Shown piece by piece: positions 7,833-60,844 of a DNA stretch of 64,000 bases; within the stretch, counting starts at the first letter, position 1; the number at the start of each line of letters is the position of its first letter. This DNA is from Trichoplax adhaerens. Taxonomy: Eukaryota; Animalia; Placozoa. The notes under the pieces were generated by a model, which made no database searches, had not been told where the DNA came from, and saw only the letters and a program-made list of their open reading frames with translations. Location of the stretch: NCBI RefSeq assembly GCF_000150275.1, contig NW_002060947.1, forward strand, positions 6,463,648-6,527,647. Direction: 5' to 3'. The position numbers and the translations under genes are program-made.

Positions 7833-8455
7833 GTCATGCTTTCAAATAGTTGCGGTTTTGAGCGGCATTTTTTCATTTCTGTACCGTACAGTACAGTACT
7901 ATGTACTGTACCGGGTTGTTACAAAGACCCTTCTTTTGGGACACAATACAGTACAGTACACAGTACTATACAGGAATAGACTGTACGGTATCATACAGTA
8001 CAGTGCAGGACTGAACCATGGAAAAGCTACAGTACAGTACAGTATCAGAAAACCGAACCCATCACCACACCGTATAGCAGCACAGTACAGTCTTTTTTTC
8101 TTTTAACTGTAACTCGTGGACAGTGCCGCGGTCCCGGCAGAAGTTTTACAGTCTACCGCCTACTATTTCTTCGTTTTTAACGCGGGCATCGACACGTATT
8201 ACCCCCATGTACCCAAATTGTTGCCTTCCCTATCCGACAGTACAGTATACGAAATCCACATATCGTTTCCAAGTTCAGACAGTCGTCCGTTCGTGTTATG
8301 CTTAGACGTTCGGACTCCGGACCAAAAGTGTTTCCAACGTTTTGAAATTTTGAAACGATTAATTAGAAAACGATCCATTTTATTTCCTCAATCATTTCTC
8401 TTTATAGATTGGTGTTTTTAGCGTAAAAAATTGCGTCGGTTAATTTGTGGATACG

Positions 8456-9352
8456 ATGGCAAATTTCGATATGAACTTCGTCAATCAAGTTTTTCCCACC
8501 AAACCTGATAAGGTCAAGGAAGAGGAAACTGCCAAAGTGGATGATTTATTGGAGGTAAAACGTAATAGGCGTGCGCTTTTTCAACGTGAAAGACGTAAAA
8601 GGAGGAGTTTAGATCAAGTGTTACTGGACAGAAAGAAGGACGCAGAAAGGAAAAGGGTTCGAAGATCAAAAAGAACAACGAATGAAATTGAACGAGATCG
8701 AAAACACGACGCCGAACGTAAGAAGCTAAGACGAGCTGCCAGAACACCGGAAGAAATTAGAACTGATCGTAAGAAAGATGCCGATAGAAAGCGACGTAAA
8801 AGGGCTGCTAGAACTCAAAATCAAATTGAGGAACAAAAGGAAGCAGATCGTCAGAGAAAACGACTCAAAAGAGCAAGTAGAACGCCGGAACAGATTCAGC
8901 TTGATCGAGAGAGAGATGCTAAAAGAAAGAGGATTAGCAGGGCTCTTAAAGCGGCGCAACGTCACGCTGACAAACAACGCCAGGAAGGGATTACCGATAC
9001 CGCAGCAGCTACTGCCACTGCCAAGGTGGAGCAAATGCCAGCAACTGAACAATCTGAACCACACGATATAGCCAATAGCGTAAGTGCAGGTGATATGACC
9101 TTTCGAACAGAGTATGTTGAAGCTTACACTGATCAAGTTATGCCAGATTCTTCAGTCATCGATAGCATTGTTGAGATCTCCAATAACGGCGAAGATCATA
9201 CCACAACTATGGAAACCGTAGCTGAAGGTGATATTGCCCAAGATAAAACAACCACTACAGAAGCAGCAGAAGTACCAAAAGGTCAATCCAAACGAAAAGC
9301 ACCAAATCAAGCTGCAGCGAAGAAAGGCAACAAGAAATCAATCAAAACATGA
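8456..9352 (+). CDS. Intronless basic protein with tandem 23-aa STPR-like repeats (putative DNA-binding; FMBP-1/ZNF821-type domain), 298 aa
   Basis: Five exact-period 23-aa repeats at about 8603-8947 (e.g. RTPEEIRTDRKKDADRKRRKRAA) plus a degenerate sixth before them. Acidic low-complexity C-terminal half and a basic NLS-like tail. First ATG at 8456; AATAAA near 9979. Confidence 0.75.
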   Translation: MANFDMNFVNQVFPTKPDKVKEEETAKVDDLLEVKRNRRALFQRERRKRRSLDQVLLDRKKDAERKRVRRSKRTTNEIERDRKHDAERKKLRRAARTPEEIRTDRKKDADRKRRKRAARTQNQIEEQKEADRQRKRLKRASRTPEQIQLDRERDAKRKRISRALKAAQRHADKQRQEGITDTAAATATAKVEQMPATEQSEPHDIANSVSAGDMTFRTEYVEAYTDQVMPDSSVIDSIVEISNNGEDHTTTMETVAEGDIAQDKTTTTEAAEVPKGQSKRKAPNQAAAKKGNKKSIKT

Positions 9353-20425: not shown

Positions 20426-21514
20426 ATGAATATTACTATTAATAGCAGCAATATAACAACTGGGAATACCACTACTTCGCCTTCTTCAAATAGAACAGCG
20501 CAATATATAGGTTGGGTAACTATTGGAATTTGCATATTAGTTGCAAATCTATTTGTCTTTCTAATAATTGTATGTCGTCGACGATTGCATAATTCATCAA
20601 ACATCATATTATGCAGCATGTTTTTAAGTGGTAGCGCTATAGCTTTACTCTATGTTTTCCCAGGTCGTGTATTTACAGTATGGAGAAGAACTTCTATTTT
20701 TATGTGTTCATCAACGCCATCCTTTGCTTTTGCTTCGTTAACATGTTATAATTTACACATCTGCGGGGTTAGCTTAGACAAGAGTGTAGCTATTATGTCG
20801 CCATTTCGTCATCGTACCATAAGCAACTCACGTAATGCTCTCATATTAATTGCATTAATTTGGTTAATTTCGTTTGTGGCTAGTTTTGTCCCACTATTTA
20901 CATATCGTCCTTATTCGAACCAACGATGTGTTTATAACCCCAGAGTACAAGAAAAAATACAGCAAGATTCAATATTCCAAATTGTGCTCTTCGTTACCTT
21001 GGTTATTGTTCCAATGATATCAACAATTATTCTTTATTCTATTATTTTTGCCCGCATTAATGGCGATTCATCAACTTTGCTCAAGTCGAAATACCGTGGT
21101 CAAAAAAAATTAATGGCCAAAAATTTCAAAGTCGCACGTCAAATGATTTTTATGCTTGGTATCTTTGCTGTTTGCTGGCTACCATTTTTTCTCATGTTTA
21201 TAGTTCAACAATTTATCTATACACTATTTACTGTGGAATTATATAACATTTTTCGCTATATCGCCTTCGTTTATCCAATTATTAATCCCATTTTATTTGC
21301 CTTCTTCACCAGTAGTATACGAGCTGAGATTCTACGATTATGTCATAAAACGGCAGCTCGACAAGATACTGTTCTGTATTATGAAAGTACTGTGAAATCA
21401 GGATTATCAACTCGAGGCTATAGTGCATCAGCTGCTAGCATTAAAGATGGGCCTAATCATTTTCCAGCCAAAAACAGTACCTATTTGAAACCACCTACTA
21501 ATCGATACCATTAA
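20426..21514 (+). CDS. Single-exon class A (rhodopsin-like) GPCR, 362 aa
   Basis: Seven hydrophobic segments; N-terminal N-glycosylation sites; TM1 AN, TM3 C...SLDKS, TM4 W, TM6 FAVCWLPF, TM7 INPILF. Confidence 0.93.
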   Translation: MNITINSSNITTGNTTTSPSSNRTAQYIGWVTIGICILVANLFVFLIIVCRRRLHNSSNIILCSMFLSGSAIALLYVFPGRVFTVWRRTSIFMCSSTPSFAFASLTCYNLHICGVSLDKSVAIMSPFRHRTISNSRNALILIALIWLISFVASFVPLFTYRPYSNQRCVYNPRVQEKIQQDSIFQIVLFVTLVIVPMISTIILYSIIFARINGDSSTLLKSKYRGQKKLMAKNFKVARQMIFMLGIFAVCWLPFFLMFIVQQFIYTLFTVELYNIFRYIAFVYPIINPILFAFFTSSIRAEILRLCHKTAARQDTVLYYESTVKSGLSTRGYSASAASIKDGPNHFPAKNSTYLKPPTNRYH

Positions 21515-29430: not shown

Positions 29431-30061
29431 TGTGACAGTGTTATGTACTGTATTAGAGTAGAAATATCTATGTTAGGATAATTCTGTTAGCCTATCCTTA
29501 TTTAGTTAACTTCTAATTTGGATATACTGTTTTTGAATATAGCACTGACTTTTTATGACAGAGACACTTATACACATACTGAAATTAATAGTTATAATAG
29601 GGAATGCAAATCATCTACTTACAGTTCGAATCATTGTGATTGTAATTTACTTATGGTAGATCGTAAATTATCACGGAAATGCTCCGTGATAGGACATATC
29701 GTAATCTGGCTATTCTGTATTAGTCAATACATGTCTATATTCGTAAATACTGTTGTCTGCATTAAGGGAGCAGTAGCTAAAATTAATACCTAATTCAGTA
29801 AATGATTCCAATGTTAATCGTATTAACTATAACTCATGAACCATTGTGGAATAGTATATAAATGCAGTATATCGTGTAATAAAGTGGATTCTCAAACTTG
29901 GTGTTTAACGTAAAATACGAGGCGTTTAAGTCTTTGTGTAGTCTGCTAGTAGAGCAAAAGTGTTTGTGATAGTGCAGGTATCGTTCCTTGATACGTGGTT
30001 CAAGGAATTGACTTATTGATCGTATATTACGTTATCTTGTTGCAAAGCTGTTTTTGTGACA
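29431..30061 (+). mobile_element. Solo LTR, family A copy 1 (631 bp)
   Basis: TGT...ACA termini; perfect 5-bp TSD GCCCG (29426-29430 / 30062-30066); internal TATATAAA followed by AATAAA; near-identical to 49318-49947. Confidence 0.85.
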
Positions 30062-30240
30062 GCCCGTAATAAATAATTTATGAATATTAGTTAAGTAGAC
30101 TTGTAATAATTAATTTACGAGTAGCAGTTAAATAGGCCCGTAATAATTAATTTATCAGTAGCATTTAAGTAGACTCGTAATAATTTAAGAGTAGTAATTA
30201 AGTGGGGTTGTAATAATCAATTTACTAGCAACAGTTAAGT
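30062..30240 (+). repeat. Minisatellite, ~37-bp unit, about 5 copies
   Basis: Repeating (C/T)GTAATAATTAATTTA..AGTAGCAGTTAAGTAG-like unit directly abutting the LTR. Confidence 0.7.
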
Positions 30241-31736: not shown

Positions 31737-32690
31737 TTATTTACGATAGAAGAATCTTCGAAATAGCACTTTAGTGCCATGTCGTAATCCAGAACTTTGA
31801 ATATAATGAATAAACGGATTAGCTCCAGCATAGCTAAAAGCAATAAATTGTGTTGGCTGGATAATAATTGTTTGATCAATTTTGATAACATCAAAAAGAA
31901 ATAGTAAGAACGTCAGGACGAATGGCAGCCAAAACGCAGCAAACACCATGACTATAATGATAGTCTGTTTTGCCGCCCGCACATGATAGCTGCGTTCGTA
32001 TGATGATCCACTTGCACGTTGGCGATGGCGTTCCATATTAATATCGTTAACTTTCAATATTTTCCAAATTGTAGCGTAAAAAACACTAATAACAATTAAT
32101 GGAATAAAAAATAACATAGCAAAAACGATGACTAAGTACAAAATGTCGCTATCTTTACGACCAAATGTAACGCAAGTGTCAATCTTATAGGGCATAAAAG
32201 TAACTAGTGGCATAAATCCGACCAATATAGAGATAATCCAGATAACTGGTACTGAAATATAGGCAACTGTTGGTGAAGAAACTGCTTTAAAACGAAGAGG
32301 ATATTTAACTCCGAGAAATCGGATCATTGCTATAGCACATATATGCAAATTTAAGTTAACAATAAATAGGATACCAATTAATTGTGTTATAGAACATATG
32401 AATACAACTTCTCGCCAATATGGGTTTGCCCATCGTGGTGCTAAGTAAAGCAATGAGTACAATATACCACTAACAAACATGCTGCCCATTAAGACGTAGC
32501 AGCCATTTCGTAAATGCTTAGTCCTCATAATTGTTGCTAACATGATTACATTGCCTATAAAAGTAACGACGGCAATAATTGGCCATATAATGAGATAAGC
32601 TAATGGTGTAGAAGTTAAAGTTCCATTCGCTCGTGACGGCAATGTAATCGCTGAAGTCGTTATACTTAAAAATGATCTTGTTACTTCCAT
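31737..32690 (-). CDS. Single-exon class A GPCR, ~317 aa
   Basis: 7TM pattern; TM1 GN, TM3 C...NLHICAIAMIRF, TM6 FWLPF, TM7 ANPFIH. First ATG at 32690 (the ORF track starts at an upstream TTG). Confidence 0.9.
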   Translation of the reverse strand: MEVTRSFLSITTSAITLPSRANGTLTSTPLAYLIIWPIIAVVTFIGNVIMLATIMRTKHLRNGCYVLMGSMFVSGILYSLLYLAPRWANPYWREVVFICSITQLIGILFIVNLNLHICAIAMIRFLGVKYPLRFKAVSSPTVAYISVPVIWIISILVGFMPLVTFMPYKIDTCVTFGRKDSDILYLVIVFAMLFFIPLIVISVFYATIWKILKVNDINMERHRQRASGSSYERSYHVRAAKQTIIIVMVFAAFWLPFVLTFLLFLFDVIKIDQTIIIQPTQFIAFSYAGANPFIHYIQSSGLRHGTKVLFRRFFYRK

Positions 32691-35600
32691 CAAGATATAA
32701 TCCAATTAAACAGCGATAAGATTGATAAAATTGTAATCGTAGAATTGTTTAGAGAAATCTTTACCCTATAATAAAGCGCTAAGATATCGAATATAGTTGA
32801 GATAGGAAATTGAGGTATTATAACTTCATTAAATTCCCAAAATTCAGAGGATAGATCCAGGTGCCAATTTAGATTTCAGTTTTTATTGCCTTGATTTCAG
32901 TGCCAAATTAGTGATCGGTATTAAAACTATGGAAAAGATAGAGCAACATAATAGCTGTTGTAGTTTAGGCTAAAACTCTTCATAAATGATCGCAATTAAG
33001 ATGTTATTTTAATTTGTTAGCAAATGGTGGCTATCACTAGCAGAAAAGGAAAAAAAGAATCAAATATTAGGGTAACCTATGATTGATATAACGTAGAGTA
33101 GTAATATTTACTTTTTAGAGATAAAAAATTAAAAATCACCCTTGGTAGATTAACACTAGACGTTAAAATCAATTCTGCTGAAATGACAGTACGAGATTTT
33201 CTCCTTTAATTATCAAGAATGAAGGATTATGAAGTTGCATAGGCTTATTACATCGGTGACAATGTCAATGAACTCTTATTCTTTCCGATTATAATAGAAA
33301 AAAATGAAAAGAAATAGGATAACCAATTGAAAATTAGAGAAAAATAATCTAAATTTAGTTAATCTATTCTACTTTAAGCAGTTTATAGCAATTAATTAAT
33401 TATTTAATGCTTACTGATTGTGTCAACAGAATGATCAACTATTCATCAGGCGATATCTTCAGTAGGCAATAAGAGATGATAATTTTGCACTATTTTCCAT
33501 TTATTCTTTGAGAATCAATAAGTATTGTTAGCCATTAAAGATGTTAAGGATATCAAATCCATTGAAGAAGGACAAGGCTGTTCAACCAACACAATCAATA
33601 CTAATAAACAAAAATTACAAGTCAGTTTTTTCCCTTTGTAGGAATTTAGCACCAGAGTAATACTATAGGAATAGGTTCATTAAAATACCTTGCAAATAGT
33701 TGATACGACCTAAAATATTCATCTTCTCTATTTTGTAATTGACGTGAAAAGACATATACTGTTTAGAAAATAATAAATTAAGAGCAGTAGGGTGCATAAA
33801 ATATCAATAAACAACCTTTGATTTGCATTTTATAGTAGTCCTATATAGAAATAAAGATGATCTTTGTGACATCATATGATGACGTCTCAAAGTCTATATT
33901 TTATTCAAAATTGTGGCAATATAATAATTTTGCCCAGGACCAAGGTTCCCCGTATGTTTTGGTCAGAGTTTTTGTTCTAATTTTTCAAGATTATTTCATA
34001 CTATCCAATACCACGAACATACTCATACTAATAACGATAAAAGGAACGTAAGACTATCATGGAAAATATTTGCAAAGTTAAATTAATTTACCGTTGTGTA
34101 CCTTTCACAAAATTATTTTCTATTTGATATCAATTTAAATTAAATATCATTATAAATTATATCATGATTGATGAAGTTAATATAAGCAATAGTAATGGTC
34201 AAATTGAATTGATCGTAATTTTAATCGTCATGATGCAATAGCATCAATTGGTATAGTCTTCCTTTATTTTATTCGGTAGTTTAGGTCACACCATCAATAT
34301 TAAGACAATTTTACGATTAAATTACCATATAGGTGATATTGACTACCTCATTAGAATAAGTGAAGTTCTATACGGTTGTAGATGGACATTTAGGATATAT
34401 TTTTGGTACATGATGTAAGCTAAATGAGAGCGATTGTAATACTACTTTGAAAGAGATTGAAATAACTCAAAAATATTGATTTGTTGCTATCAATGATCGA
34501 CGTCAAAAACGTAGCCATCTGTAAATTTTCTCAAACTTATTTACGAAATTGACTGCAATAATTCTGGTAAGAATAAAAATTATCCTTAGCAAGGATAGGA
34601 CTGCAAAATATGCGTATTTCCATTTATGATCTACATTATACTCATTTCCATTTGTTTACAGATGCTACGCAACGGTTATGAATGATATTCTTTATTGATT
34701 CCGATTTCGTTGTTCACAACCCTGCAGGTGTTGTACCGCTATTCTAAGCATTGTTTCTCTAATTTTGTATAATGATTGGCAAAGAGTTATTCTACTGATT
34801 TACTGTTATCAAGACTTGGCTGCTACTTTTTTACAAACCAAAGGGATGAGCTTTCTTCGTAAATCATGCATTTATACGTAAAAACCAAGTCGATCTTCTC
34901 AATTGGATTGGATTGAAATAGTTTAAATGTTTTTCAAAGTCATTTAACACCGAATCTACAAAGACTTTCCGCTACGTCCTTTGATGGTACTATCAACTCA
35001 TTATGTAAATTTGGTCGTTTCCTATTTTATTCACTAGTACATCAGTTCATTTAGAACTCTTTATGCATGAACTGGTAGCATGTTTGACGTCAGATAGAAA
35101 ATAATTGACATATGCATAAGTTGGAATGTTTCCATACAACAACGGTTTGTAAACTGAATCATTTACTGCAGATTATACAATTGTCCATGATTATTCATAA
35201 TAGAATTAACTTCATTTATTCACTTTTCTAATAGTATAGCGGCAATGTGGGTTAATATCGAGTTGGCTTAGTACATGAATGGTAAAATTCGTTGCGTTAA
35301 TAAAAGCTTGCAGATATCAAAGAAATATCACTTCTAGGAGAGTGAAATGGAACGGTAATTATCTTTTATTTACACTTGTGAAATCATTTTCTATTCCCGC
35401 AAATTGCTAAAATTGATGGAATTACTTAATTTTCAGCAGTAATAAGTAAATGGCATCAGATATATTCTTCAAGATTATGACGATTATAAACAAATAATAT
35501 GTATTGATTATATCGCTATTTGATTCCTTAGTAGTCATAATTAATGTATATGTATGATAAAATTGGAAGAAAGGAATTCATATTGGCATTTTATAGTCTA

Positions 35601-38600: not shown

Positions 38601-39995
38601 TTTGAGATGTGATCATCACTGAAGTTCTAATTTGAATGTTCATTATAAGGGAAATGGTATAAAAATATCAACAGTTACCGCTTTGTTTGAATGCTTAGAT
38701 TAGATTCCACTAGCATTTACGCAGTTGAAATTTAAATTCACACGTCAACATTTGCAAGGCTCCTATCATAAAATTTTGATCACTCGTGCGAAAATGGATA
38801 GAGTGTAGATTTAAAAGATCGCTCCAAGATTAAGTTTACTGTGTTGATGAATTGCAGCTTTTACAGTTATGTACAATAATGAATTCTATAGTATGATATG
38901 AATCTTTACGATAAGACTTCCTAGTCTTAACTGTACGTAGATTATGGATTTATAATAAATAGTATTTGCTCATCTAAGAGTCATCCCGAGGCATGGATTT
39001 GTAGTTATTAGCTAGCGCGAAAGGAATGCGATCTCAAGAAGTTATGCCATAGGCTTCCGTTGGGTTTTCTCGATAATACCATTAGCAAATAACAGTTTTG
39101 CATTACCCCTACATTAATATTCATAGCTAAAAATAAATTCTTATCACTGTATGACATTATGTTTTTATTGCTTAATAATTTAAATAATTAATTACAATAT
39201 TTCTATTAAAAAAAAATTTTTTGAAGTCACTGTATTCACAATGCAGAGACCGACTGAAACATATTATTCAGCTAAAATTAATAAACACCAGCAAAATTAC
39301 TTTAATCGTTTAACCAATAGCGCAACATCTGCTATGTGCAATGCTGTGTAAGTACAGTAATAGACGCTACTACATGTTCCATTTACCATGCAAAATATGA
39401 TATAGGAATTAATCACTTTCTCAATAAGATCGAATTTGATTTAGTAAGATCATATAAAGTAATAAAATAAAAAATAAGGGTAATCGTAAATCACTGCATA
39501 CAAGCAAAAGGCGGTTCATTTTTCACTTGATAACGTATGATTATTCTCAATTTTAATGGTTACCATAGTTATTGCTAAATAAATTCAGCTATAGGAGGAT
39601 ATCAAGCATGATTTATATCTATTTTTTCCCGCATATTTAATGATTGTACTAAGGAAAAAGAATCGATTGCGACTTAATATCTAAATCCTAAGACTCGCAT
39701 TTAAGTTATCAGGCAGATAAAATAACGTTAAATTAAAGAACATTGAAATGACGGCCATGATTGAAAATTATTTAATAAACAGGCCAAAAATTGATTGATT
39801 TATTGGACATAATGTCACGTACTGACTTACAATAGCATCAAAAGTCTTTATTGCAAACCTATCATAAAACTTGCACATTTAGCATATTTATCTATCCGCA
39901 TAGTCTAGCTATTAACTTAACAAAAACGATTACAATCATCAAGCTTAACAACAAGATTATTGGGATCTGAAATTGATAATTACTACCGCCATTCT

Positions 39996-41372
39996 TCAAC
40001 AGCTGGCAGCCAAGTGAGAAGATTTAAAAGTATTATAATCGTCTTCCACAGTATCAGCATAGGAATTAGCAATAGATCGAACCAAACTTCGAAATTCGGA
40101 ATGGCGACCATCCGTCATGATATCAATTTCCTTATCCACCGATGCACTAATGAGTGAGGAATCGTAATCTTTGTCGGAACGTGCATGATCTGTTGCCAAG
40201 ATAGCTCCCCACTGAGAAGCCAAATTAGTAAATCGATCAAGAGTATTTAATTCGGTTGTATCGAAACCTTCCTTGTATGGTGAGCGTTCTCGAACCGAAT
40301 AGTAGCCACCATTAAAATTCATCCAGCCCAAGTAATCATCCACAGATGTTAGTAAAGCTTTATAAGCGATTGCATGGCGCTCTGCATCATTATTAAATGC
40401 CGAGTCAAAATATTGCTGCTGATAGTAGCCCCAATAGTAGTAGGCCGTAGGTTTGCCTTGTAGTTTAACATCGAGAATAATATCATCGTTCTGCGATGAT
40501 GAAGGTCCTTCAATGAGAATATAGTATCGTGGAGTGCCTAAAGAGCCGGTACCTGCTAATATACGTTTAGCAATATCTTTGACATAGAAATAGGAGGACG
40601 AGTAAGAGATTTTGCCCGACAAGGTAGTGCCATAGCCAGACATTGCTTGAGTAATAGCGGATCTATCGGATGACGAGGCCGCTTCTAATTTTTGATAGGC
40701 TAAATCAAATTGGCGCCGATTGCTAACCAAGTTGGTCCATTTGTCTAACATTTTCACTCGACTTTCTTTATTTTCTACATCGGCTAAAAAGTTATCTAAG
40801 CGGCCATAAGTATTGGATCGGGTATAAATTTTATCAACTTCTTGGTTATTGCCACGGTAGTTCTTCATGGTGTCTAAATAGTTCTCACTAAATGCATCGA
40901 GGATTGTATTCACTTTCGATTGGGAGAATCCACTATTTTGACGAGCTACCAACACAAGACTGACTGCCATGCGCCAAATATCATATTGGTAATCCTCAAT
41001 AACAGATTCATCAAAATCATTGAGATCATAAATAACTTGGTCTTGATCATTAGTGAAAGCCCCATAATTTTCAGCATGAAGATCTCCTTGTAGCCATACT
41101 TTAGTATTATCGTTGCTAAATTGGCTTAAGCGGCTATCACCCGTAAAATCCTTCCAAAATAAATGGTTGGTACCACGGTAAAAGACGAAAGCAGATCCTG
41201 CCATTTTGCAGTATTTTATCTGCTTGTCGCTGCTCGATATTCCTGTATTCCAAGATTCTATCTCGCTAATAGCACTAGCTCTTCGCGATTGGATATGCCT
41301 TGAGACGGCTTGATGTGTAAGAAATATGGCGATGATAAGCGATACGGTAAGGAGAAAGCTTGCAATCCTCAT
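39996..41372 (-). CDS. DUF2252-family (bacterial-type, kinase-like) protein with a predicted signal peptide, 458 aa, intronless
   Basis: Family motifs as recalled: MAGSAFVFYRG, GDLHAENYG, YDLNDFDE, YDIWRMAVSL, GTGSLGTPRYYIL, ILDVK, VRERSP. N-terminus MRIASFLLTVSLIIAIFLTHQAVS. True ATG at 41372. Confidence 0.88.
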   Translation of the reverse strand: MRIASFLLTVSLIIAIFLTHQAVSRHIQSRRASAISEIESWNTGISSSDKQIKYCKMAGSAFVFYRGTNHLFWKDFTGDSRLSQFSNDNTKVWLQGDLHAENYGAFTNDQDQVIYDLNDFDESVIEDYQYDIWRMAVSLVLVARQNSGFSQSKVNTILDAFSENYLDTMKNYRGNNQEVDKIYTRSNTYGRLDNFLADVENKESRVKMLDKWTNLVSNRRQFDLAYQKLEAASSSDRSAITQAMSGYGTTLSGKISYSSSYFYVKDIAKRILAGTGSLGTPRYYILIEGPSSSQNDDIILDVKLQGKPTAYYYWGYYQQQYFDSAFNNDAERHAIAYKALLTSVDDYLGWMNFNGGYYSVRERSPYKEGFDTTELNTLDRFTNLASQWGAILATDHARSDKDYDSSLISASVDKEIDIMTDGRHSEFRSLVRSIANSYADTVEDDYNTFKSSHLAASC

Positions 41373-43555
41373 TTTTACTTTAATTTTCAGGATCGGGTAG
41401 CTACAAATCAATCGCTATGAAAGATACTTGACCAATTTTTGCTATTAGCAGTTTCTTTACAAAGAGATAATCTCCTTAAATAGTCTTGGTAGATAAGCAC
41501 ATCGGAGTAGTTAATGTCAATATTGATCGCCTGATTCTGTTCCATGTAAAGAGGAATGCGATGGATTAAACCACTCTTCGAATCTCTTAATGCTGTAAAA
41601 TCAATATAAAGCGTTCATTAGGTCAGATTAATCCTTAGTTAAAATAAACAGAGATACTGTCCATATTGATAATCCAAACAGAACAAAGTAAACTCGGGTT
41701 ACTAATATAATATTTTACAATTGGTAAATATAAAGCAATTTTAATGTACTTTTATTATTTCATGAACGGCTTCTTCACTATACTGTGAGCCTGTACTGTA
41801 ATTTAGTGATGACTCCGGCCTTTAATTTAGGCAAATTTATAAAAGCTTTTAGAAATTTTGAATCATTTTGTGTAGTATTAATTACGGCTATAATCAGTAG
41901 CCTATCGAGATGATGGATTTCATTGGAGGCTCAGTGCAAATTTTGCTCTTATTTAGCGTTATTATTGCAAAAATCGCTTAATATATCCTTTATTATCAAC
42001 TGATTTATGAAGTAAAGTAACGTTAGTACTAGGAGGTTCCATCTAAATCTGCATCTATAAATCAGTGCAGGCTGCCTTATTATTTCTATTGACATAAATG
42101 TTTTATTAGCTAAATTGATCGATCAACTTCATAAATAGTTTAGGTTTATTGCATGACGAAAGGTAATTAAGATCGTTTACAAATATTGGTTCCAACCATA
42201 TCTTTCTATACCACCACGGATACTATCTACTATCGTAATAGCTTTTAGCGCAAATTATTCATAAAAGTATTTTCTCTATTTGCTAAAGATTAAGCTTGAT
42301 AGGCCAAAAGCAGAAGATAAAGTTAAATAATTGTATATAAATATATATTATGTGTAAAGGTTAAATTCAGGTCTATTTGACCTCATAAGGGTCATCAATG
42401 GTGACAAAGTTAACCATAAGTATTAAAGCTTGATTATATTTATTTGCGAAGGATAACTATATAAAAGCTAAATAATGGAAAAAGTATTTAATTAAATTCT
42501 AACATTTATTAAATAATGGATTAAATGACCATGACCTGTAAAGGGATTTCTTCTCAGAAAGATTTAGGTGTCATTGAATTAGAATCAAATTATCATAATT
42601 TCTTTTAAGTTCATACGCTGTAATAACCTGCATATTATAACAGATACTGAGTCTTTATCAATAATTAACTTAAAGGCTATGAAATGATTATTTATACTAA
42701 CTTTATCAGACATTGATTTCTTCCCCAAAACTGGTAACTGGAAAATTTGCTTCTGAAATTTACGGTTCTTGTACATCCTTAAGCAACTATCATAAATACA
42801 AACGAATTAACCTAGGTTTAAGATCCGTTTTAACTTATTAAAAACTTACATATTGAGTTCTTATCGCAAATTTCCTTGCTACTATTGAGAAAATATGGTC
42901 ATTTATTCGCAGTCAGGGGCTTCGCATTTATGTACGAATTAAAAATTTTAATCGTGACGTAACATGAATTATTTTATGAAAACTAGGTACAATTTTCTCT
43001 CGTGTAACAATACTTCAGATACTTTCTAGCTGATAATTCATAACAACTGCTTCTATTGATTATAATTTTTGTTTCTTTAATTATTTTTTGATCTTAATCT
43101 TTGCATATGTATTAGGAACTACGAAAATAATTTATTATACTACCTTAATAGTTTCATGCTATCAATGCAGTAAGAAAATGTTTTAAAATTGAAGGATACA
43201 AACCATCTCAAGGTGACTGCTATAAATGGCTTACTTGATAAACCTTAAGTTTACTTTTCATGCCAATTCTATCAATGATACTGTACAGAAAGGGCCGAAT
43301 AAGAATTATTAAGCAATTTGCAATTTTTAGAACGATATATTAATATTTAACTAAAATAATTCTAGTTTCAATGACAGTAAATTTATAGTACAATTTTCAT
43401 CTGTAATAAAATCTTCCAATACGTAATATTGAATTGTTGTACTGTACATCATCGAAAGATGTCAGTTAATTAGTGAGATGAGAGTATAATATGACGCTAT
43501 TGATGTAATTCGATAACACCTTAGCTATATGGGCGATATCTGTCAAGAAAATTGT

Positions 43556-44142
43556 TGTCACAACCCTCACGTGTGGCAAAGGAAAGTAAAGAACTCTAGT
43601 GTAGTTACTTAAAACTTGGGCTATTTCTCCCAGTACTTTCAGTTTCTATGAGAGAAGTATTTGAGAACTCGATTTCTCGGCTGATCTCCACAGACAACTG
43701 ACTAATTATTTCACTATTCTTCACGATATGAGTCTAGCCGTTTCTTGAGCAATTACTAACTTTATTCTACAAACTCATGCGCTTAAATAGGTTTCTACAG
43801 TGAATTCCAATATTAACGAGTGAGAATTCATACTTTACAAGTTACATTAATTAGTATAATACCATTACTAAATATGCTTGTCGATATTCTCAGACTTAGA
43901 TAGCTACAAGCTATCAGGTGTTAAGACGCTTAACCTTCGTCCATATACGGCTCAATTTTTAGAGATTAGCACACCTTATAAACCTACAGTAAATTAACTG
44001 TTAACAACTTCTATTTCTATCTCATTTCTACCATCCTATTATCAGCTACAAGCGCATTAAACATAGCAGATAATCTTATCTTATCTATTCATAAGCATTC
44101 ATTAATCAACAGTTACTTAATTAGTAACGGCGTACCGTGACA
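43556..44142 (-). mobile_element. Solo LTR, family B copy 1 (587 bp)
   Basis: TGTCAC...GTGACA termini; near-identical reverse complement of 60258-60844. Flanks ATTGT / CATGT do not form a perfect TSD. Confidence 0.8.
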
Positions 44143-44219
44143 CATGTAAGAAGTAATCTTATGACATTGGATATAATACTAACGAACACTATCAAGCTGT
44201 GCAACAGCTACTGTTAGGA

Positions 44220-49317: not shown

Positions 49318-49947
49318 TGTGATAGTGTTATGTTCTGTATTAGAGTAGAAATATCTATGTTAGGATAATTCTGTTAGCCTATCCTTATTTAGTTAACTTC
49401 TAATTTGGATATACTGTATTTTAATATAGCACTGACTTTTTATGACAGTGACACTTATACACATACTGAAATTAATAGTTATAATAGGGAATGCAAATCA
49501 TCTACTTACAGTTCAAATTATTGTGATTGTAATATACTTATAGTAGATTGTAAATTATCATGGAAATGTTCCGTGATAGGACATATCGTAATCTGACTAT
49601 TTTGTATTAGTCATTATATGTCTATATTCGTAAATACTGTTGTCTGCATTAAGGGAGCAGTAGCTAAAATTAATACCTAATTCAGTAAATGATTCCAATG
49701 TTAATCGTATTAACTATAACTCATGAACCATTGTGGAATAGTATATAAATGCAGTATATCGTGTAATAAAGTGGATTCTCAAACTTGGTGTTTAACGTAA
49801 AATACGAGGCGTTTAAGTCTTTGTGTAGTCTGCTAGTAGAGCAAAAGTGTTTGTGATAGTGCAGGTATCGTTCCTTGATACGTGGTTCAAGGAATTGACT
49901 TATTGATCGTATATTACGTTATCTTGTTGCAAAGCTGTTTTGTGGCA
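49318..49947 (+). mobile_element. Solo LTR, family A copy 2 (630 bp)
   Basis: TG...CA termini; perfect 5-bp TSD GTAAT (49313-49317 / 49948-49952); near-identical to 29431-30061. Confidence 0.85.
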
Positions 49948-50187
49948 GTAATCTACAGTTTGCAGCGGGAAAATATCAGGACCTTTACGTATTAAAGTAT
50001 AGTGAAAATGATATTTAGCGTTAAGACATTGCGATAATGGACGTGTTACACAATGTTCTATGATCATGGAGATCTTGTGTTAGGGTATTGTGTAAACGTG
50101 GTTGTGACAAACTATAAATTAGAATTAGATCCACTACCATAATCATAAACATGGTAAAATAATATTATTTTTCTCGCACCAGCAATA

Positions 50188-54500: not shown

Positions 54501-55799
54501 AAATACCATGCACTGCGAGAATTCTAGATGCTTAAGATAGTTTTAAAGTATTTTCAACTGTTACTATAAAACTTGATATGCACAATTCTAGTCCGGGGAA
54601 AGATTACTCTAAAAAGGTACTTTACTTTTGGAAGTACTTTATACTATTAGTAACTGTTAGCAGTAAAGCTTGTTATGCGCAATTTCAGTCCAGTAAAAGA
54701 CTACATTAAAAGGTATTCTGCTTTACGTTAAATGTATTAAAGCTTCAACTTTAATGCTTTTCACTTATATTAATCTAATCATCATGTTAAATCAAAAGCA
54801 AATGAAACATTTATTTTTAGGCTATGTAAGTGACATAAGACTTACTCTATAAGAACTTCGAAACCTTGTTAAGAAGTTATTCTAGATAACCCTGTTTTAG
54901 TGAGCAAAGGTTCAGAATTACTACTCTAGAGATCTGATTGAAAGCTCATATTCATTAAAATAAACAGTTGATGTCTTTATGCTTAAATTATGATTGTAAT
55001 GAATGAATGATGATGACTTTACTGACGATATATTAAAAGAAAATTTTTCTGTCAAAATATAACTAAATTTTTAAATGGTTGGATATAAATCCCTACATTT
55101 TTGTTTTCTTTTTTGAATAATTAATAATTTTATTGATGCTTTGCACAAAATTAAACTATTTTTCGATATTGCCTTTAAATATTCATATGCTAATAATGTT
55201 GCAGAGACTTGTAACATTAATCATTGTGATGAAGCGATCGGGATCAAAATACTTTGATTACTACTTCATTTCTTGGCAACATTACATTAGCAATAAATAG
55301 TAATATTTTATAAAATCGATTCGAAGCCAATTGAGAAACCATCCATACTACGTATAGTCGTAAGCGTAGGCAGGTTATATTATGATCACTCAGAGTGCTT
55401 TTTCGTATTCCAATGAGTTCACTGTATAACATTCCCTCTCGACAGACCCAATTTTTAGTATCTTGATTAAGCATACACTCGAAACATGTCCATTTGATCA
55501 GCTGTCTACGTAGCCCACGTTACTTTCTTTAATAATAAATGGTAAGGATCGTTTAACTTTGAAAATTTAAAATACCCTCTTTCCTTCATATTACTTGCAC
55601 AAGATAAATTATAATATTATCGTTATAATGCAAATCCATTTCTAATTAATAAGTATAAAAATATGATTAATTCATTAATCATTTGATTTCTACTTCACAC
55701 TTTTACAGATTGCTGTAAATCGTATGAAAATTGGCTATCTCAATGTAGAAGTGGAATTATTGCGTCTTGTTAATCTTTTGGCTAAGAAGTTTAGGGAAA

Positions 55800-56897
55800 A
55801 TGTCGTCTATTGAGATTTTAGCGACATCTGCAGCATTTACTGTCCCAAGCAATCAATTAAGCGCAGATGCAATTGCTGAAAGTGTCGTATGGGGAATTAT
55901 TGCCTTACTAACTGTGATTACCAACAGTTGCCTACTTTATATCTTAATTAAGAAGCGCCATTTAAAGATTGTTTCCAGGCCAATATTAATCAGCATCGCT
56001 ATAGCAAGTATTCTATTTGCAATCCTATATATTTTACCACGTTGGAGCATCCCCAACATTTACCATAATCCTATCTTATGTCATATTTTACCAGTTTTGG
56101 GCCAATCATTTATATTAACAATTAATTTTCATGTATGGATTATTGCTGTTGATCGCTACATATTTATTGTTCATCCACAGCGCCATCGTGCCCATTGTAC
56201 TAGAACTACAACTTGGACAATCTTATTAGTGGTCTGGATTATAACCTTATTGATGCCATTTGTGCCTTTAATGACCTATAGTCCGATCGATCCTAAAACT
56301 TGCGATTATATCGTTCAGGATAACTTGTCTAATGAAATCTTTTACTTAACCTATTTCATCGTCTTTTTTTTCGTACCGCTGATCATCATTACTGTAGTTT
56401 ATATCGGTATTTTAATTATGCTGCATTCCAAACAAAAACGGTATAGGCAACAATTATCGATGGATACTTATGGATTAACACAAAAACATCATATTAAAAA
56501 TGGACGCACTCTTGCCCATATGCTAACATTCATTGGTGTATTTGTTATATTTTGGCTACCATTTGTTTTAACCTTCTTGATTTTACAACTGAGGCCTAAA
56601 ACAGACCTTCAGCTACAAGTACTCAAGGTTACGCAATATATTGCCTTCTCCTATCCAGCTTTTAATCCAATCATATATTCTTATTTTACATTAAAAATAC
56701 GTCGAGAAATTTTCTCAATGTTTAGACAATGTGAAAATAAACTAGGCTGCAACATTGCTTGTATTCCTTATTGTCGTTCTGCCGCCATATCACCCGAGCA
56801 GCTAGTACAGGAACGTTATGATGTGGCAGCTCGCGTTATTGATGTTAAACATCCCTCGACGGTAGTTGCTGAGAATTCTTCTTTCTTAGATAGATGA
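55800..56897 (+). CDS. Single-exon class A GPCR, ~365 aa
   Basis: 7TM pattern with AVDRY, FWLPF and NPIIY. First ATG at 55800; a probable 5'-UTR splice acceptor (TTTTACAG) near 55708. Confidence 0.93.
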   Translation: MSSIEILATSAAFTVPSNQLSADAIAESVVWGIIALLTVITNSCLLYILIKKRHLKIVSRPILISIAIASILFAILYILPRWSIPNIYHNPILCHILPVLGQSFILTINFHVWIIAVDRYIFIVHPQRHRAHCTRTTTWTILLVVWIITLLMPFVPLMTYSPIDPKTCDYIVQDNLSNEIFYLTYFIVFFFVPLIIITVVYIGILIMLHSKQKRYRQQLSMDTYGLTQKHHIKNGRTLAHMLTFIGVFVIFWLPFVLTFLILQLRPKTDLQLQVLKVTQYIAFSYPAFNPIIYSYFTLKIRREIFSMFRQCENKLGCNIACIPYCRSAAISPEQLVQERYDVAARVIDVKHPSTVVAENSSFLDR

Positions 56898-59800: not shown

Positions 59801-60257
59801 GACTTAATATAAAAACAGAAAGTAAGCTAAAAACAAGTTTAGCATTGTCAAAGCAGATGGAAGGTGATAAAAATATTAAGGATAGAATGCGATCTAATAG
59901 TTACGCTATTTTACATAACAGAAGCTGTCAACTCGTAGTGAGAAATATTTTAGAAGCCAAATTCATCCCTACTTCCTTATTCAATTAAGAAACCAGAAAA
60001 TGTTTATTCATTCGCAATTGAAAGCAGTGGATTAAATCTATTCGTGTACATATGAAAGTCTATATATTATTGTTATAGCATTATTTCAAAGTCATTTATT
60101 TTAAGTCATAAATTAAAAATGCAACAGCGTTGATATTGACTGAACAATAAATTTAAGGAATAACTAGATCTATGAAATAATGACTAAAATCAAAGAAAAT
60201 TATCATTATCATCTTTTATCAAGCAAAGATAACAAGAATTGGACTACTATATTTCAT

Positions 60258-60844
60258 TGTCACGGTACGCCGTTACTAATTAAGTAACTGTAAATTAATG
60301 AATGCTTATGAATAGATAAGATAAGGTTATCTGCTATGTTTTAATGCGCTTGTAGCTGATAATAGGATGGTAGAAATGAGATAAAAATAGAAGTTGTTAG
60401 CAGTTAATTTACTGTAGGTTTATAAGTTGTGTTAATCTCTAAAAATTGAGCTGTATATGGACGAAGGTTAAGCGTCTTAACACCTGATAGCTTGTAGCTA
60501 TCTAAGTCTGAGGATATCGACATGTATATTTAGTAATGGTATTATACTAATTAATGTAACTTGCAAAGCATGAATTCTCACTCGTTAATATTGGAATTCA
60601 CTGTAGAAACCTATTTAAGCGCGTGTGTTTGTAGAATAAAAAAGTAATTGCTCAAGAAACGGCAAGACTCATATCGTGAAGAATAGTGTAATAATTAGTC
60701 AGTTGTCTGTGGAGATCAGCCGAGAAATCGAGTTCTCAAATACTTCTCTCATAGAAACTGAAAGTACTGGGAGAAATAGCCCAAGTTTTAAGTAACTACA
60801 CTAGAGTTCTTTACTTTCCTTTGCCACAAGTGAGGGTTGTGACA
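60258..60844 (+). mobile_element. Solo LTR, family B copy 2 (587 bp)
   Basis: TGTCAC...GTGACA termini; perfect 5-bp TSD TTCAT (60253-60257 / 60845-60849); internal TATTTAAG followed by AATAAA. Confidence 0.85.

What the first reader, a model, noticed from the sequence alone, without database searches (positions are those of the whole stretch)
39996..41372. Bacterial-type DUF2252 kinase-like gene with a signal peptide in an animal chromosome: candidate horizontally acquired secreted phosphotransferase
Seen: an intact, intronless 458-aa ORF, visibly more GC-rich than its flanks, lying between animal GPCR genes and solo LTRs with no other bacterial-like genes nearby. It has a signal-peptide-like N-terminus followed by HIQSRR (possible basic processing site). 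It keeps GDLHAEN and NDFDE, equivalent to the HGDLHxxN catalytic loop and metal-binding Asp motif of APH/choline-kinase-like folds. Knowledge: DUF2252 is an uncharacterised, mainly microbial family. Inference: a domesticated horizontally transferred gene encoding an extracellular or secretory-pathway kinase-like enzyme, perhaps used in external digestion, detoxification or microbe control. A possible 5'-UTR acceptor (TTTGTAG near 41401) and an AATAAA at 39847-39852 hint at eukaryotic expression signals but are weak in AT-rich DNA.
Basis: partly seen in the sequence, partly recalled or inferred. Interest (0 to 1): 0.8.

Follow-up and report, generated by a model that had tools for sequence, protein, structure and literature searches.

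The report
Bacterial secreted kinase-like gene in Trichoplax
A simple marine animal (the placozoan Trichoplax) carries an intact gene of bacterial origin for an uncharacterised kinase-like protein with an export signal. The gene is kept under strong selection, but what it does is unknown.

Summary
Window 39996-41372 (-) is an intact, intronless, single-copy 458-aa ORF that matches Pfam DUF2252 over its whole length (E 6e-76). The genome is Trichoplax adhaerens.

- **Not a contaminant.** An independent Trichoplax sp. H2 assembly is collinear with the window over 21 kb across both junctions.
- **Older than Trichoplax.** Two further lineages, 75-76% identical, lie on metagenome contigs (one from marine biofilms) with AT-rich, gene-free flanks. 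That distance fits the published Trichoplax-Hoilungia divergence. dN/dS is 0.06-0.09.
- **Bacterial origin.** The four sequences form one clade (100/100) inside a bacterial radiation (54-60% identity to Gammaproteobacteria, cyanobacteria and myxobacteria). No other animal appears among the listed hits. The only named eukaryote is one diatom, and a shared origin with it is not rejected (AU p 0.33).
- **Export is inherited.** Most bacterial relatives also have Sec or lipoprotein signals, a co-occurring Cys pair and extracellular fusion domains.
- **Fold.** The AlphaFold model (pLDDT 95) matches the N-lobe of APH-type small-molecule kinases only weakly (Z about 5). That region lies after the catalytic motifs, as expected for a permuted kinase fold.

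Enzyme activity, substrate, secretion and expression are all untested. This is a well-supported ancient gene transfer, moderately interesting.

The parts
39996..41372 (-). Complete intronless CDS (458 codons plus TGA stop at 39996-39998) of a DUF2252 protein
   Evidence: ORF list and sequence. Pfam PF10009 E 5.9e-76. Only copy in the 105.6-Mb genome.
41301..41372 (-). Predicted signal peptide, residues 1-24: n-region MR, hydrophobic core I3-T19, then AVS with the predicted cut before R25
   Evidence: Kyte-Doolittle 11-mer maximum 2.93. The -3/-1 small-residue pattern is kept in the other placozoan-like copies (AMS/RH and VMS/RY). Not run through SignalP.
41067..41087 (-). GDLHAEN, residues 96-102: catalytic-loop-like motif (D97 putative base, N102 putative metal ligand)
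   Evidence: D97, H99 and N102 are invariant in 62 homologues. The spacing to the next motif resembles the APH/choline-kinase D-x4-N ... D-x-D pattern (own knowledge).
41007..41021 (-). NDFDE, residues 118-122: DFG-equivalent, metal-binding Asp motif
   Evidence: NDFDE is present in 59 of 62 homologues; D119 and D121 are invariant.
40278..40676 (-). Residues 233-365: beta-rich domain that matches the N-lobe of APH-type small-molecule kinases. It contains the invariant K303 (D-V-K, nt 40464-40472), the putative nucleotide-binding lysine.
   Evidence: AlphaFold2 model with pLDDT 95.2. VIA-align matches: fructosamine-3-kinase 3jr1 Z 5.3, rmsd 3.1, 94 aligned; NahK 4ocj Z 5.3; macrolide phosphotransferase 5uxd Z 5.0; further APH, homoserine kinase and YihE rows. 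K303 invariant.
41208..41210 (-). Cys55, putative partner of the C-terminal Cys458 (nt 39999-40001) in a disulfide
   Evidence: Both Cys are present in 46 of 62 homologues. No homologue has Cys55 without a C-terminal Cys. 39 of the 46 signal-bearing homologues have both. The distance in the model could not be measured.
39847..39852 (-). AATAAA 144 nt downstream of the stop codon: candidate poly(A) signal (weak)
   Evidence: Present, but the hexamer occurs 256 times in 64 kb, so a hit here is expected by chance fairly often.

Best explanation
This is a functional placozoan gene acquired from a bacterium before the Trichoplax and Hoilungia-type lineages split. It has been kept since as a single intronless gene.

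The protein belongs to an exported subfamily of DUF2252, which is a circularly permuted protein-kinase-like fold. The catalytic-loop and metal-binding motifs lie in the N-terminal half, and the nucleotide-binding N-lobe lies in the C-terminal half.

Most likely mechanism (inferred, not shown):
1. The N-terminal signal peptide takes the protein into the ER and is removed near residue 24.
2. Cys55 and the C-terminal Cys458 form a disulfide.
3. The mature enzyme acts in the secretory pathway or outside the cell as a nucleotide-dependent phosphotransferase on a small molecule or sugar-like substrate. K303 would hold the nucleotide, N102 and D119 the metal, and D97 would act as the base.

The substrate is unknown.
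For: Shown:
- Family. Full-length DUF2252 match.
- Host. A cluster mate from Trichoplax sp. H2 is 99% identical. The H2 contig is collinear with window 29999-51189 at 97.7-99.1% identity, with the same GPCR 7.3 kb downstream. The gene is single-copy.
- Other lineages. P0002 and P0003 are 75-76% identical in protein and 73-74% in DNA. They lie on contigs with 31-32% GC flanks that hold no called bacterial genes. One comes from marine biofilm metagenomes (PMC6355793). The distance fits the mean Trichoplax-Hoilungia orthologue distance of 28.3 +/- 12.9% (PMC6067683).
- Selection. dN/dS is 0.058-0.093, with synonymous sites saturated.
- Phylogeny. The four copies form one clade at 100/100, nested among bacterial proteins. 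The nearest unnamed outgroups, P0014 and P0015, sit in dense bacterial gene contexts. Every named hit among those listed is bacterial except one diatom.
- Export. 46 of 62 homologues have signal-like N-termini and several have lipoboxes. The Cys pair co-occurs with these. Some bacterial relatives are fused to LysM or PPC domains.
- Fold. pLDDT is 95.2. Residues 233-365 match the N-lobe of APH-type kinases. The motif residues are invariant. DUF2252 is listed in the Pfam PKinase clan with flipped lobes (PMC9758233).
Against: - No expression, secretion or enzyme data were available here.
- The structural matches are weak (Z about 5, below the tool's own comfort level of 8). Foldseek found nothing significant.
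- A model of the isolated N-terminal half gave no significant match.
- There is no Pfam APH hit by sequence.
- The donor is unresolved (polytomy).
- Placozoan origin of the 75%-identical contigs is inferred from composition, divergence and habitat, not from linked animal genes.
- Bacterial gene neighbourhoods are not conserved, so they give no clue to the substrate.
- ATP is scarce outside cells, so a classical kinase role for an exported protein is not self-evident.
Confidence: 0.8

Rival explanations
1. Eukaryote-to-eukaryote route. The placozoan gene came from an alga such as a diatom (placozoans graze on biofilm algae), or diatom and placozoan copies share one transfer history, rather than a direct bacterium-to-animal transfer.
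For: The diatom Seminavis robusta has a 468-aa homologue on a 184-kb contig. Its best non-self hit is the placozoan-like P0002. The quick tree put it loosely beside the placozoan clade (SH-aLRT 82). The AU test does not reject placozoa plus diatom as one clade (p 0.33, delta lnL 0.8).
Against: The diatom protein is only 52-54% identical, no closer than many bacterial proteins at 54-60%. In the careful tree it pairs with bacterial P0014 (88/69), not with placozoans. No other eukaryotic relatives appeared in either search.
Confidence: 0.1
2. Vertical descent. DUF2252 was present in an early eukaryote or animal ancestor and was lost everywhere except in placozoans and a few protists.
For: The gene is old within placozoans. 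Absence from other animals was judged only from the best 120 rows of each of two word-indexed searches, not from a named exhaustive search.
Against: More than 100 bacterial clusters are closer to the placozoan protein than any other listed animal or opisthokont sequence. The gene is intronless. The placozoan clade is nested in a bacterial radiation whose members share the same export signal and Cys pair. The nearest Atlas clusters are 83-100% bacterial.
Confidence: 0.04
3. Assembly artefact. A piece of bacterial contaminant was joined into an animal scaffold.
For: The Trichoplax assembly is known to contain bacterial sequence from a rickettsial endosymbiont (PMC3641634).
Against: The same gene with the same flanks and neighbour occurs in the independently assembled H2 genome. 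The flanks are AT-rich non-coding animal DNA for about 7 kb on each side. The best bacterial identity is only 60%. GC3 is close to host values. Diverged orthologues have the same kind of flanks. Neither a promoter-like nor a terminator-like excess is seen.
Confidence: 0.01
4. The gene is conserved but the protein is not a phosphotransferase. It could use the kinase-like fold for other chemistry, such as nucleotidyl transfer, or act as a binding protein.
For: No DUF2252 member has a reported activity in the papers held; only five mention the family. Structural matches are weak. Exported proteins see little ATP.
Against: All the residues expected for phosphoryl transfer (D97, N102, D119, K303) are invariant across 62 diverse homologues, which is not the pattern of pseudokinases. 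The best structural matches are all active small-molecule kinases.
Confidence: 0.3

Closest known systems
Pfam DUF2252 (PF10009), exported bacterial subfamily (e.g. proteins of Thiomargarita, Endothiovibrio diazotrophicus, Moorena producens, myxobacteria)
   Same: Full-length match. 54-60% identity and the same length. The same invariant motifs, an N-terminal export signal and the Cys55 / C-terminal Cys pair.
   Different: It is encoded in an animal nuclear genome with AT-rich flanks and host-like codon composition. The signal sequence itself is not alignable with the bacterial ones. In the bacterial sequences aligned, the hydrophobic stretch is typically followed by A-x-A and then the conserved D-R. 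The placozoan copies have A/V-x-S before R-H/Y.
APH / choline-kinase-like small-molecule kinases (fructosamine-3-kinase 3jr1, N-acetylhexosamine 1-kinase 4ocj, macrolide 2'-phosphotransferase 5uxd, homoserine kinase 2ppq)
   Same: Residues 233-365 superpose on their N-lobe (Z 4.8-5.3). D-x-H-x-x-N and D-F-D motifs are present, with a lysine in the N-lobe.
   Different: The order of the lobes is permuted: the catalytic motifs come first. There is no sequence-level Pfam APH hit. These kinases are cytosolic, whereas this protein carries an export signal. Activity was not tested.
Previously proposed bacterial gene transfers in Trichoplax adhaerens (dapF, murA, BPL_N, rsmE, phrB, GNAT, mhpC; Driscoll et al. 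2013, PMC3641634)
   Same: A bacterial-type, mostly intronless gene on a large eukaryotic scaffold.
   Different: DUF2252 is not among those twelve. The authors call ten of the twelve likely recent transfers because they lack introns and other eukaryotic features such as secretion signals, and link four of the twelve (dapF, murA and the two BPL_N genes) to the rickettsial symbiont. This gene has a signal peptide, predates the split from the Hoilungia-like lineages, and its listed relatives are Gammaproteobacteria, cyanobacteria and myxobacteria; no Rickettsiales appear among them.
Secretory-pathway kinases of animals (Fam20C/Fam20B type)
   Same: A kinase-like fold with a signal peptide, so a possible luminal or extracellular site of action. 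Hydra Fam20 (5xom) appears only as a weak row at Z 3.7.
   Different: No specific similarity, a different family, and bacterial rather than animal ancestry.

Membership tests
Pfam DUF2252 (PF10009) | Score above the curated gathering threshold over the whole profile | tested here: met
   256.5 bits against a cut-off of 22.3; profile positions 7-390 of 392.
Pfam DUF2252 (PF10009) | Family-wide invariant residues kept (D97, H99, N102, D119, D121, K303, R332, H396) | tested here: met
   All are invariant columns in the 62-sequence alignment, and the window protein carries each of them.
Protein-kinase-like superfamily (Pfam PKinase clan), APH-like branch | Bilobal fold with an N-lobe beta-sheet that carries a nucleotide-binding Lys | tested here: inconclusive
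   Residues 233-365 match APH-type N-lobes at Z 4.0-5.3, below the tool's confidence level. Foldseek found nothing significant. Clan membership with flipped lobes is taken from PMC9758233.
Protein-kinase-like superfamily (Pfam PKinase clan), APH-like branch | Catalytic loop D-x4-N followed by a metal-binding D-x-D/DFG motif | tested here: met
   GDLHAEN (96-102) and NDFDE (118-122) are conserved in 62 homologues. That these equal the APH motifs is an inference from spacing, not from an alignment to APH.
Protein-kinase-like superfamily (Pfam PKinase clan), APH-like branch | Canonical order: N-lobe before C-lobe | tested here: not met
   The catalytic motifs (96-122) come before the N-lobe-like domain (233-365). 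This is a circular permutation, as described for DUF2252.
Protein-kinase-like superfamily (Pfam PKinase clan), APH-like branch | Phosphotransferase activity | not testable with these tools
   No biochemical data. No characterised DUF2252 member in the literature held.
Bacterium-to-animal horizontally transferred gene | Physically part of the animal chromosome, reproducible in independent assemblies | tested here: met
   21-kb collinearity with the Trichoplax sp. H2 contig, covering both junctions and the neighbouring GPCR.
Bacterium-to-animal horizontally transferred gene | Nested among bacterial sequences in a phylogeny | tested here: met
   The placozoan clade (100/100) lies inside a bacterial radiation. 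Its exact sister is unresolved, and a diatom link is not rejected.
Bacterium-to-animal horizontally transferred gene | Absent from other animals | tested here: inconclusive
   No other animal appears among the 120 best rows of either search or in the nearest Atlas clusters. Many rows are unnamed, and no exhaustive named search of animal proteomes was possible.
Bacterium-to-animal horizontally transferred gene | Maintained by selection or expressed in the recipient | tested here: met
   dN/dS is 0.058-0.093 between lineages. Expression itself could not be tested.
Secreted / secretory-pathway protein | Cleavable N-terminal signal peptide | tested here: inconclusive
   A hydrophobic core of 17 residues and a -3/-1 A-x-S pattern, kept in three lineages. 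No SignalP-type predictor was available, and a signal anchor is not excluded.

The most novel reading that the evidence does not exclude
Placozoans took an exported bacterial kinase-like enzyme and now release it from their ventral secretory cells into the external digestive space. There it would phosphorylate, and so inactivate or mark, a small molecule or cell-wall sugar of the microbes and algae they graze. That would be an animal extracellular small-molecule kinase of bacterial origin, and the first function assigned to DUF2252.
Probability: 0.12. Interest if true: 0.75.

Novelty: new member of a known kind. Interest (0 to 1): 0.5.

Why it matters
Well-documented ancient bacterial genes that an animal phylum has kept under selection are still few. 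This one has both junctions confirmed in two assemblies, diverged orthologues and strong purifying selection. The family has no known function, and only five of the papers held mention it; none concerns placozoans. The reference T. adhaerens protein model starts at residue 57 and so hides the signal peptide. A conserved, exported, permuted kinase-like enzyme in one of the simplest animals could be a tractable way to learn what DUF2252 does. It could also show how a bacterial exported protein is re-used by an animal that digests its food outside the body.

Tried and rejected
- **Solved structures.** A Foldseek search of the full model against the PDB found nothing at E <= 0.001, only scattered kinase-domain rows at E > 1. 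A profile search of PDB sequences found nothing relevant.
- **Catalytic half alone.** A separate model of residues 44-232 (pLDDT 79.6) gave unrelated helical rows at Z <= 5.1 with VIA-align. Foldseek gave non-significant rows that were repeatedly APH(2''), amicoumacin kinase and methylthioribose kinase (E 1.6-4.7). This is a hint only, and the C-lobe assignment stays unproven.
- **Family libraries.** The atlas structure library was not available. Pfam at E <= 10 gave no APH or kinase hit. NCBIfam gave nothing.
- **Bacterial neighbourhoods.** 86 flanking ORFs from the bacterial loci hit 107 different families, none in more than 4 loci, so there is no operon clue.
- **Synteny with the diverged copies.** The flanks of the 75%-identical contigs do not align with the window outside the CDS, so synteny could not be tested. 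A JGI metagenome scan for more such contigs found only bacterial-type relatives at 46-48% identity.
- **Literature.** Ringrose et al. 2013 (the Trichoplax proteome paper, listed among the sources of the gene-transfer compendium) is not held. The compendium's tables are not held either. I could not check whether the gene was listed there.
- **Bacterial expression signals.** Neither promoter-like nor terminator-like sites are enriched around the gene.
- **Not run.** I did not run the large representative-protein search. It returns no names, so it could not show absence from animals.
Full report
**1. The observation**

The ORF list shows one open frame at 39996-41411 on the minus strand. From the first ATG at 41372 it encodes 458 residues and ends in TGA at 39996-39998. 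Pfam gives a full-length match to DUF2252 (PF10009): E 5.9e-76, 256.5 bits against a cut-off of 22.3, profile positions 7-390 of 392. NCBIfam has no model for it.

GDLHAEN is at residues 96-102 and NDFDE at 118-122. The N-terminus reads MRIASFLLTVSLIIAIFLTHQAVS followed by RHIQSRR.

The gene is 40.2% GC in flanks of about 30%. The three intronless rhodopsin-type receptor ORFs of the window are 35% GC. GC3 is 0.366 in this gene and 0.26-0.31 in those receptor ORFs. Most of the contrast with the flanks is therefore coding versus non-coding DNA, and the gene is only slightly richer in GC than host genes.

The AATAAA at 39847-39852 exists, but the hexamer occurs 256 times in the window. Neither bacterial promoter-like nor terminator-like sites are enriched.

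**2. Whose DNA it is**

The window is part of an 8.57-Mb contig of a 105.6-Mb assembly. The protein clusters at 90% or more with RDD38002.1 of Trichoplax sp. H2 and is 99% identical to it. The genome is therefore Trichoplax adhaerens or a very close relative. Earlier notes of this scan place AMD1 with a U12-type intron in the same window.

DUF2252 occurs once in the genome. The public 402-aa model of the reference genome starts at residue 57 and so lacks the N-terminus. The H2 model has all 458 residues.

**3. Not an assembly artefact**

The H2 contig was assembled independently (Kamm et al. 2018, PMC6057997). It aligns with window 29999-51189 in collinear blocks of 97.7-99.1% identity. These blocks cover the gene, both of its junctions and about 10 kb on either side. 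In both assemblies the next called gene is the same receptor gene, 7.3 kb downstream on the same strand.

**4. Older than the genus**

Two other proteins are 75-76% identical over the whole length.
- P0002 lies on two nearly identical ENA metagenome contigs.
- P0003 lies on a Logan contig.

Their coding sequences are 73-74% identical to the window gene in DNA and 80% identical to each other. Similarity between those two extends a little into the flanks. The flanks are 31-32% GC and hold no called bacterial genes.

One of the contigs comes from the marine biofilm metagenomes of Zhang et al. 2019 (PMC6355793). Biofilm-covered surfaces in warm seas are where placozoans are collected (own knowledge). 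Eitel et al. 2018 report a mean protein distance of 28.3 +/- 12.9% and a mean CDS distance of 28.5% between T. adhaerens and Hoilungia hongkongensis orthologues (PMC6067683). The 24-25% and 26-27% seen here fit that.

All three lineages keep a hydrophobic N-terminus followed by S-R-H/Y. In the Logan contig it lies upstream of the called start.

Pairwise dN/dS is 0.058 (Trichoplax against L003) and 0.093 (L001 against L003). Synonymous sites are saturated between Trichoplax and the others. I infer, but have not proved, that these contigs are from Hoilungia-type placozoans. On that reading the gene was present before those lineages split and has been under strong purifying selection since.

**5. 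Where it came from**

The next best hits are 54-60% identical. Those with names are bacterial: Thiomargarita, Endothiovibrio diazotrophicus, Moorena, Leptolyngbya, Gloeothece, Pseudenhygromyxa and others. A scan of species-representative bacterial genomes returned 80 loci from Cyanobacteriota, Myxococcota, Pseudomonadota, Acidobacteriota and other phyla.

Trees:
- In a 92-row tree, the four placozoan-type sequences form one clade (SH-aLRT 100) inside this bacterial radiation.
- In a careful 39-row tree, the same clade has 100/100 support.
- The position of the clade within the radiation is an unresolved polytomy, so no donor can be named.
- The two nearest unnamed rows I checked, P0014 and P0015, lie in dense bacterial gene contexts.

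The only named eukaryote in either search is the diatom Seminavis robusta, at 52-54% identity. In the careful tree it pairs weakly with bacterial P0014 (88/69). An AU test does not reject a diatom-plus-placozoan clade (p 0.33). An algal intermediate therefore stays possible at low probability.

No other animal appears in the lists, and the nearest ESM Atlas clusters are 83-100% bacterial.

The gene is not among the twelve transfers proposed for Trichoplax by Driscoll et al. 2013 (PMC3641634). DUF2252 is mentioned in only five of the papers held, none about placozoans.

**6. What the protein looks like**

The AlphaFold2 model built on 62 homologues is confident (mean pLDDT 95.2, pTM 0.91). Foldseek finds no significant solved relative, and neither does a profile search of PDB sequences.

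An exhaustive structural alignment places residues 233-365 on the N-terminal lobe of APH-type small-molecule kinases:
- fructosamine-3-kinase 3jr1: Z 5.3, rmsd 3.1, 94 residues aligned;
- N-acetylhexosamine 1-kinase 4ocj: Z 5.3;
- macrolide phosphotransferase 5uxd: Z 5.0;
- homoserine kinase, YihE and several aminoglycoside phosphotransferases at lower Z.

These scores are modest. The same family recurs among the rows, although unrelated folds (amine oxidases, cystatins) score equally well over the same stretch. The invariant lysine K303 lies in this part.

The catalytic-loop-like and metal-binding motifs lie earlier, at residues 96-122. This agrees with two papers that treat DUF2252 as a member of the Pfam PKinase clan with the N- and C-lobes swapped (PMC9758233; bioRxiv 10.64898/2026.09.18.752743).

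A model of residues 44-232 alone gave no significant match. Only non-significant APH-type rows appeared in Foldseek. The fold of the catalytic half is therefore inferred from the motifs and from the literature.

**7. Export is inherited, not invented**

- Of 62 homologues, 46 have a strongly hydrophobic stretch before the conserved core, and several have a lipobox.
- Cys55 and a Cys within the last 12 residues occur together in 46 of 62. Cys55 never occurs without the C-terminal Cys. 39 of the 46 signal-bearing proteins have both. This pattern suggests a disulfide in an exported protein.
- Two bacterial relatives are fused to domains typical of extracellular proteins: LysM in P0029 and PPC in P0078.
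It need not be a eukaryotic processing site.
- The placozoan signal has small residues at -3 and -1 (AVS, AMS, VMS) in all three lineages. No signal-peptide predictor was available.

**8. Function**

Bacterial gene neighbourhoods are not conserved and no member has been characterised. The substrate is therefore open.

The reading I commit to is a nucleotide-dependent phosphotransferase that acts on a small or sugar-like substrate in the secretory pathway or outside the cell. I put it at about even odds, given that the gene is functional. The main alternative is other chemistry on the same fold.

**9. Verdict**

This is a new, well-supported case of a known kind of event, and a new eukaryotic member of a known but uncharacterised family.

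Noticed in passing
window 20426-21514 (+), 31737-32705 (-), 55767-56897 (+): Three intronless rhodopsin-family (7tm_1) receptor ORFs of 322-376 aa are spread over 36 kb around the DUF2252 gene. This looks like a local receptor gene cluster.
   Followed up: partly
window 29431-30062 and 49318-49950; 43556-44160 and 60242-60844: Two pairs of dispersed repeats of about 600 bp (95-99% identical): one direct pair 19.9 kb apart that brackets a receptor gene and the DUF2252 gene, and one inverted pair.
   Followed up: partly
window 8447-9352 (+): A 301-aa open frame with 43.5% GC and no Pfam match, the most GC-rich ORF of the window. It may be a large exon of an unannotated or lineage-specific gene.
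   Followed up: no
P0001 versus P0121 (window 41205-41372): The reference T. adhaerens protein model (402 aa) starts at Met57 and omits the signal peptide. The Trichoplax sp. H2 model has the full 458 aa. Proteome-wide secretome predictions based on the reference models would miss this protein.
   Followed up: yes
L086:3219-6418: In one bacterial contig, the two genes downstream of the DUF2252 homologue (on the opposite strand) are an AAA_21/OLD-TOPRIM gene and a UvrD-type helicase gene. This pair resembles a Gabija-type defence system. It is probably incidental, since bacterial neighbourhoods are not conserved.
   Followed up: no
P0039 (Seminavis robusta, 184-kb contig): A single diatom carries a DUF2252 protein of the same exported subfamily with a signal-like N-terminus. 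No other diatom relative appeared in the searches. This may be a second, independent transfer into a eukaryote.
   Followed up: partly
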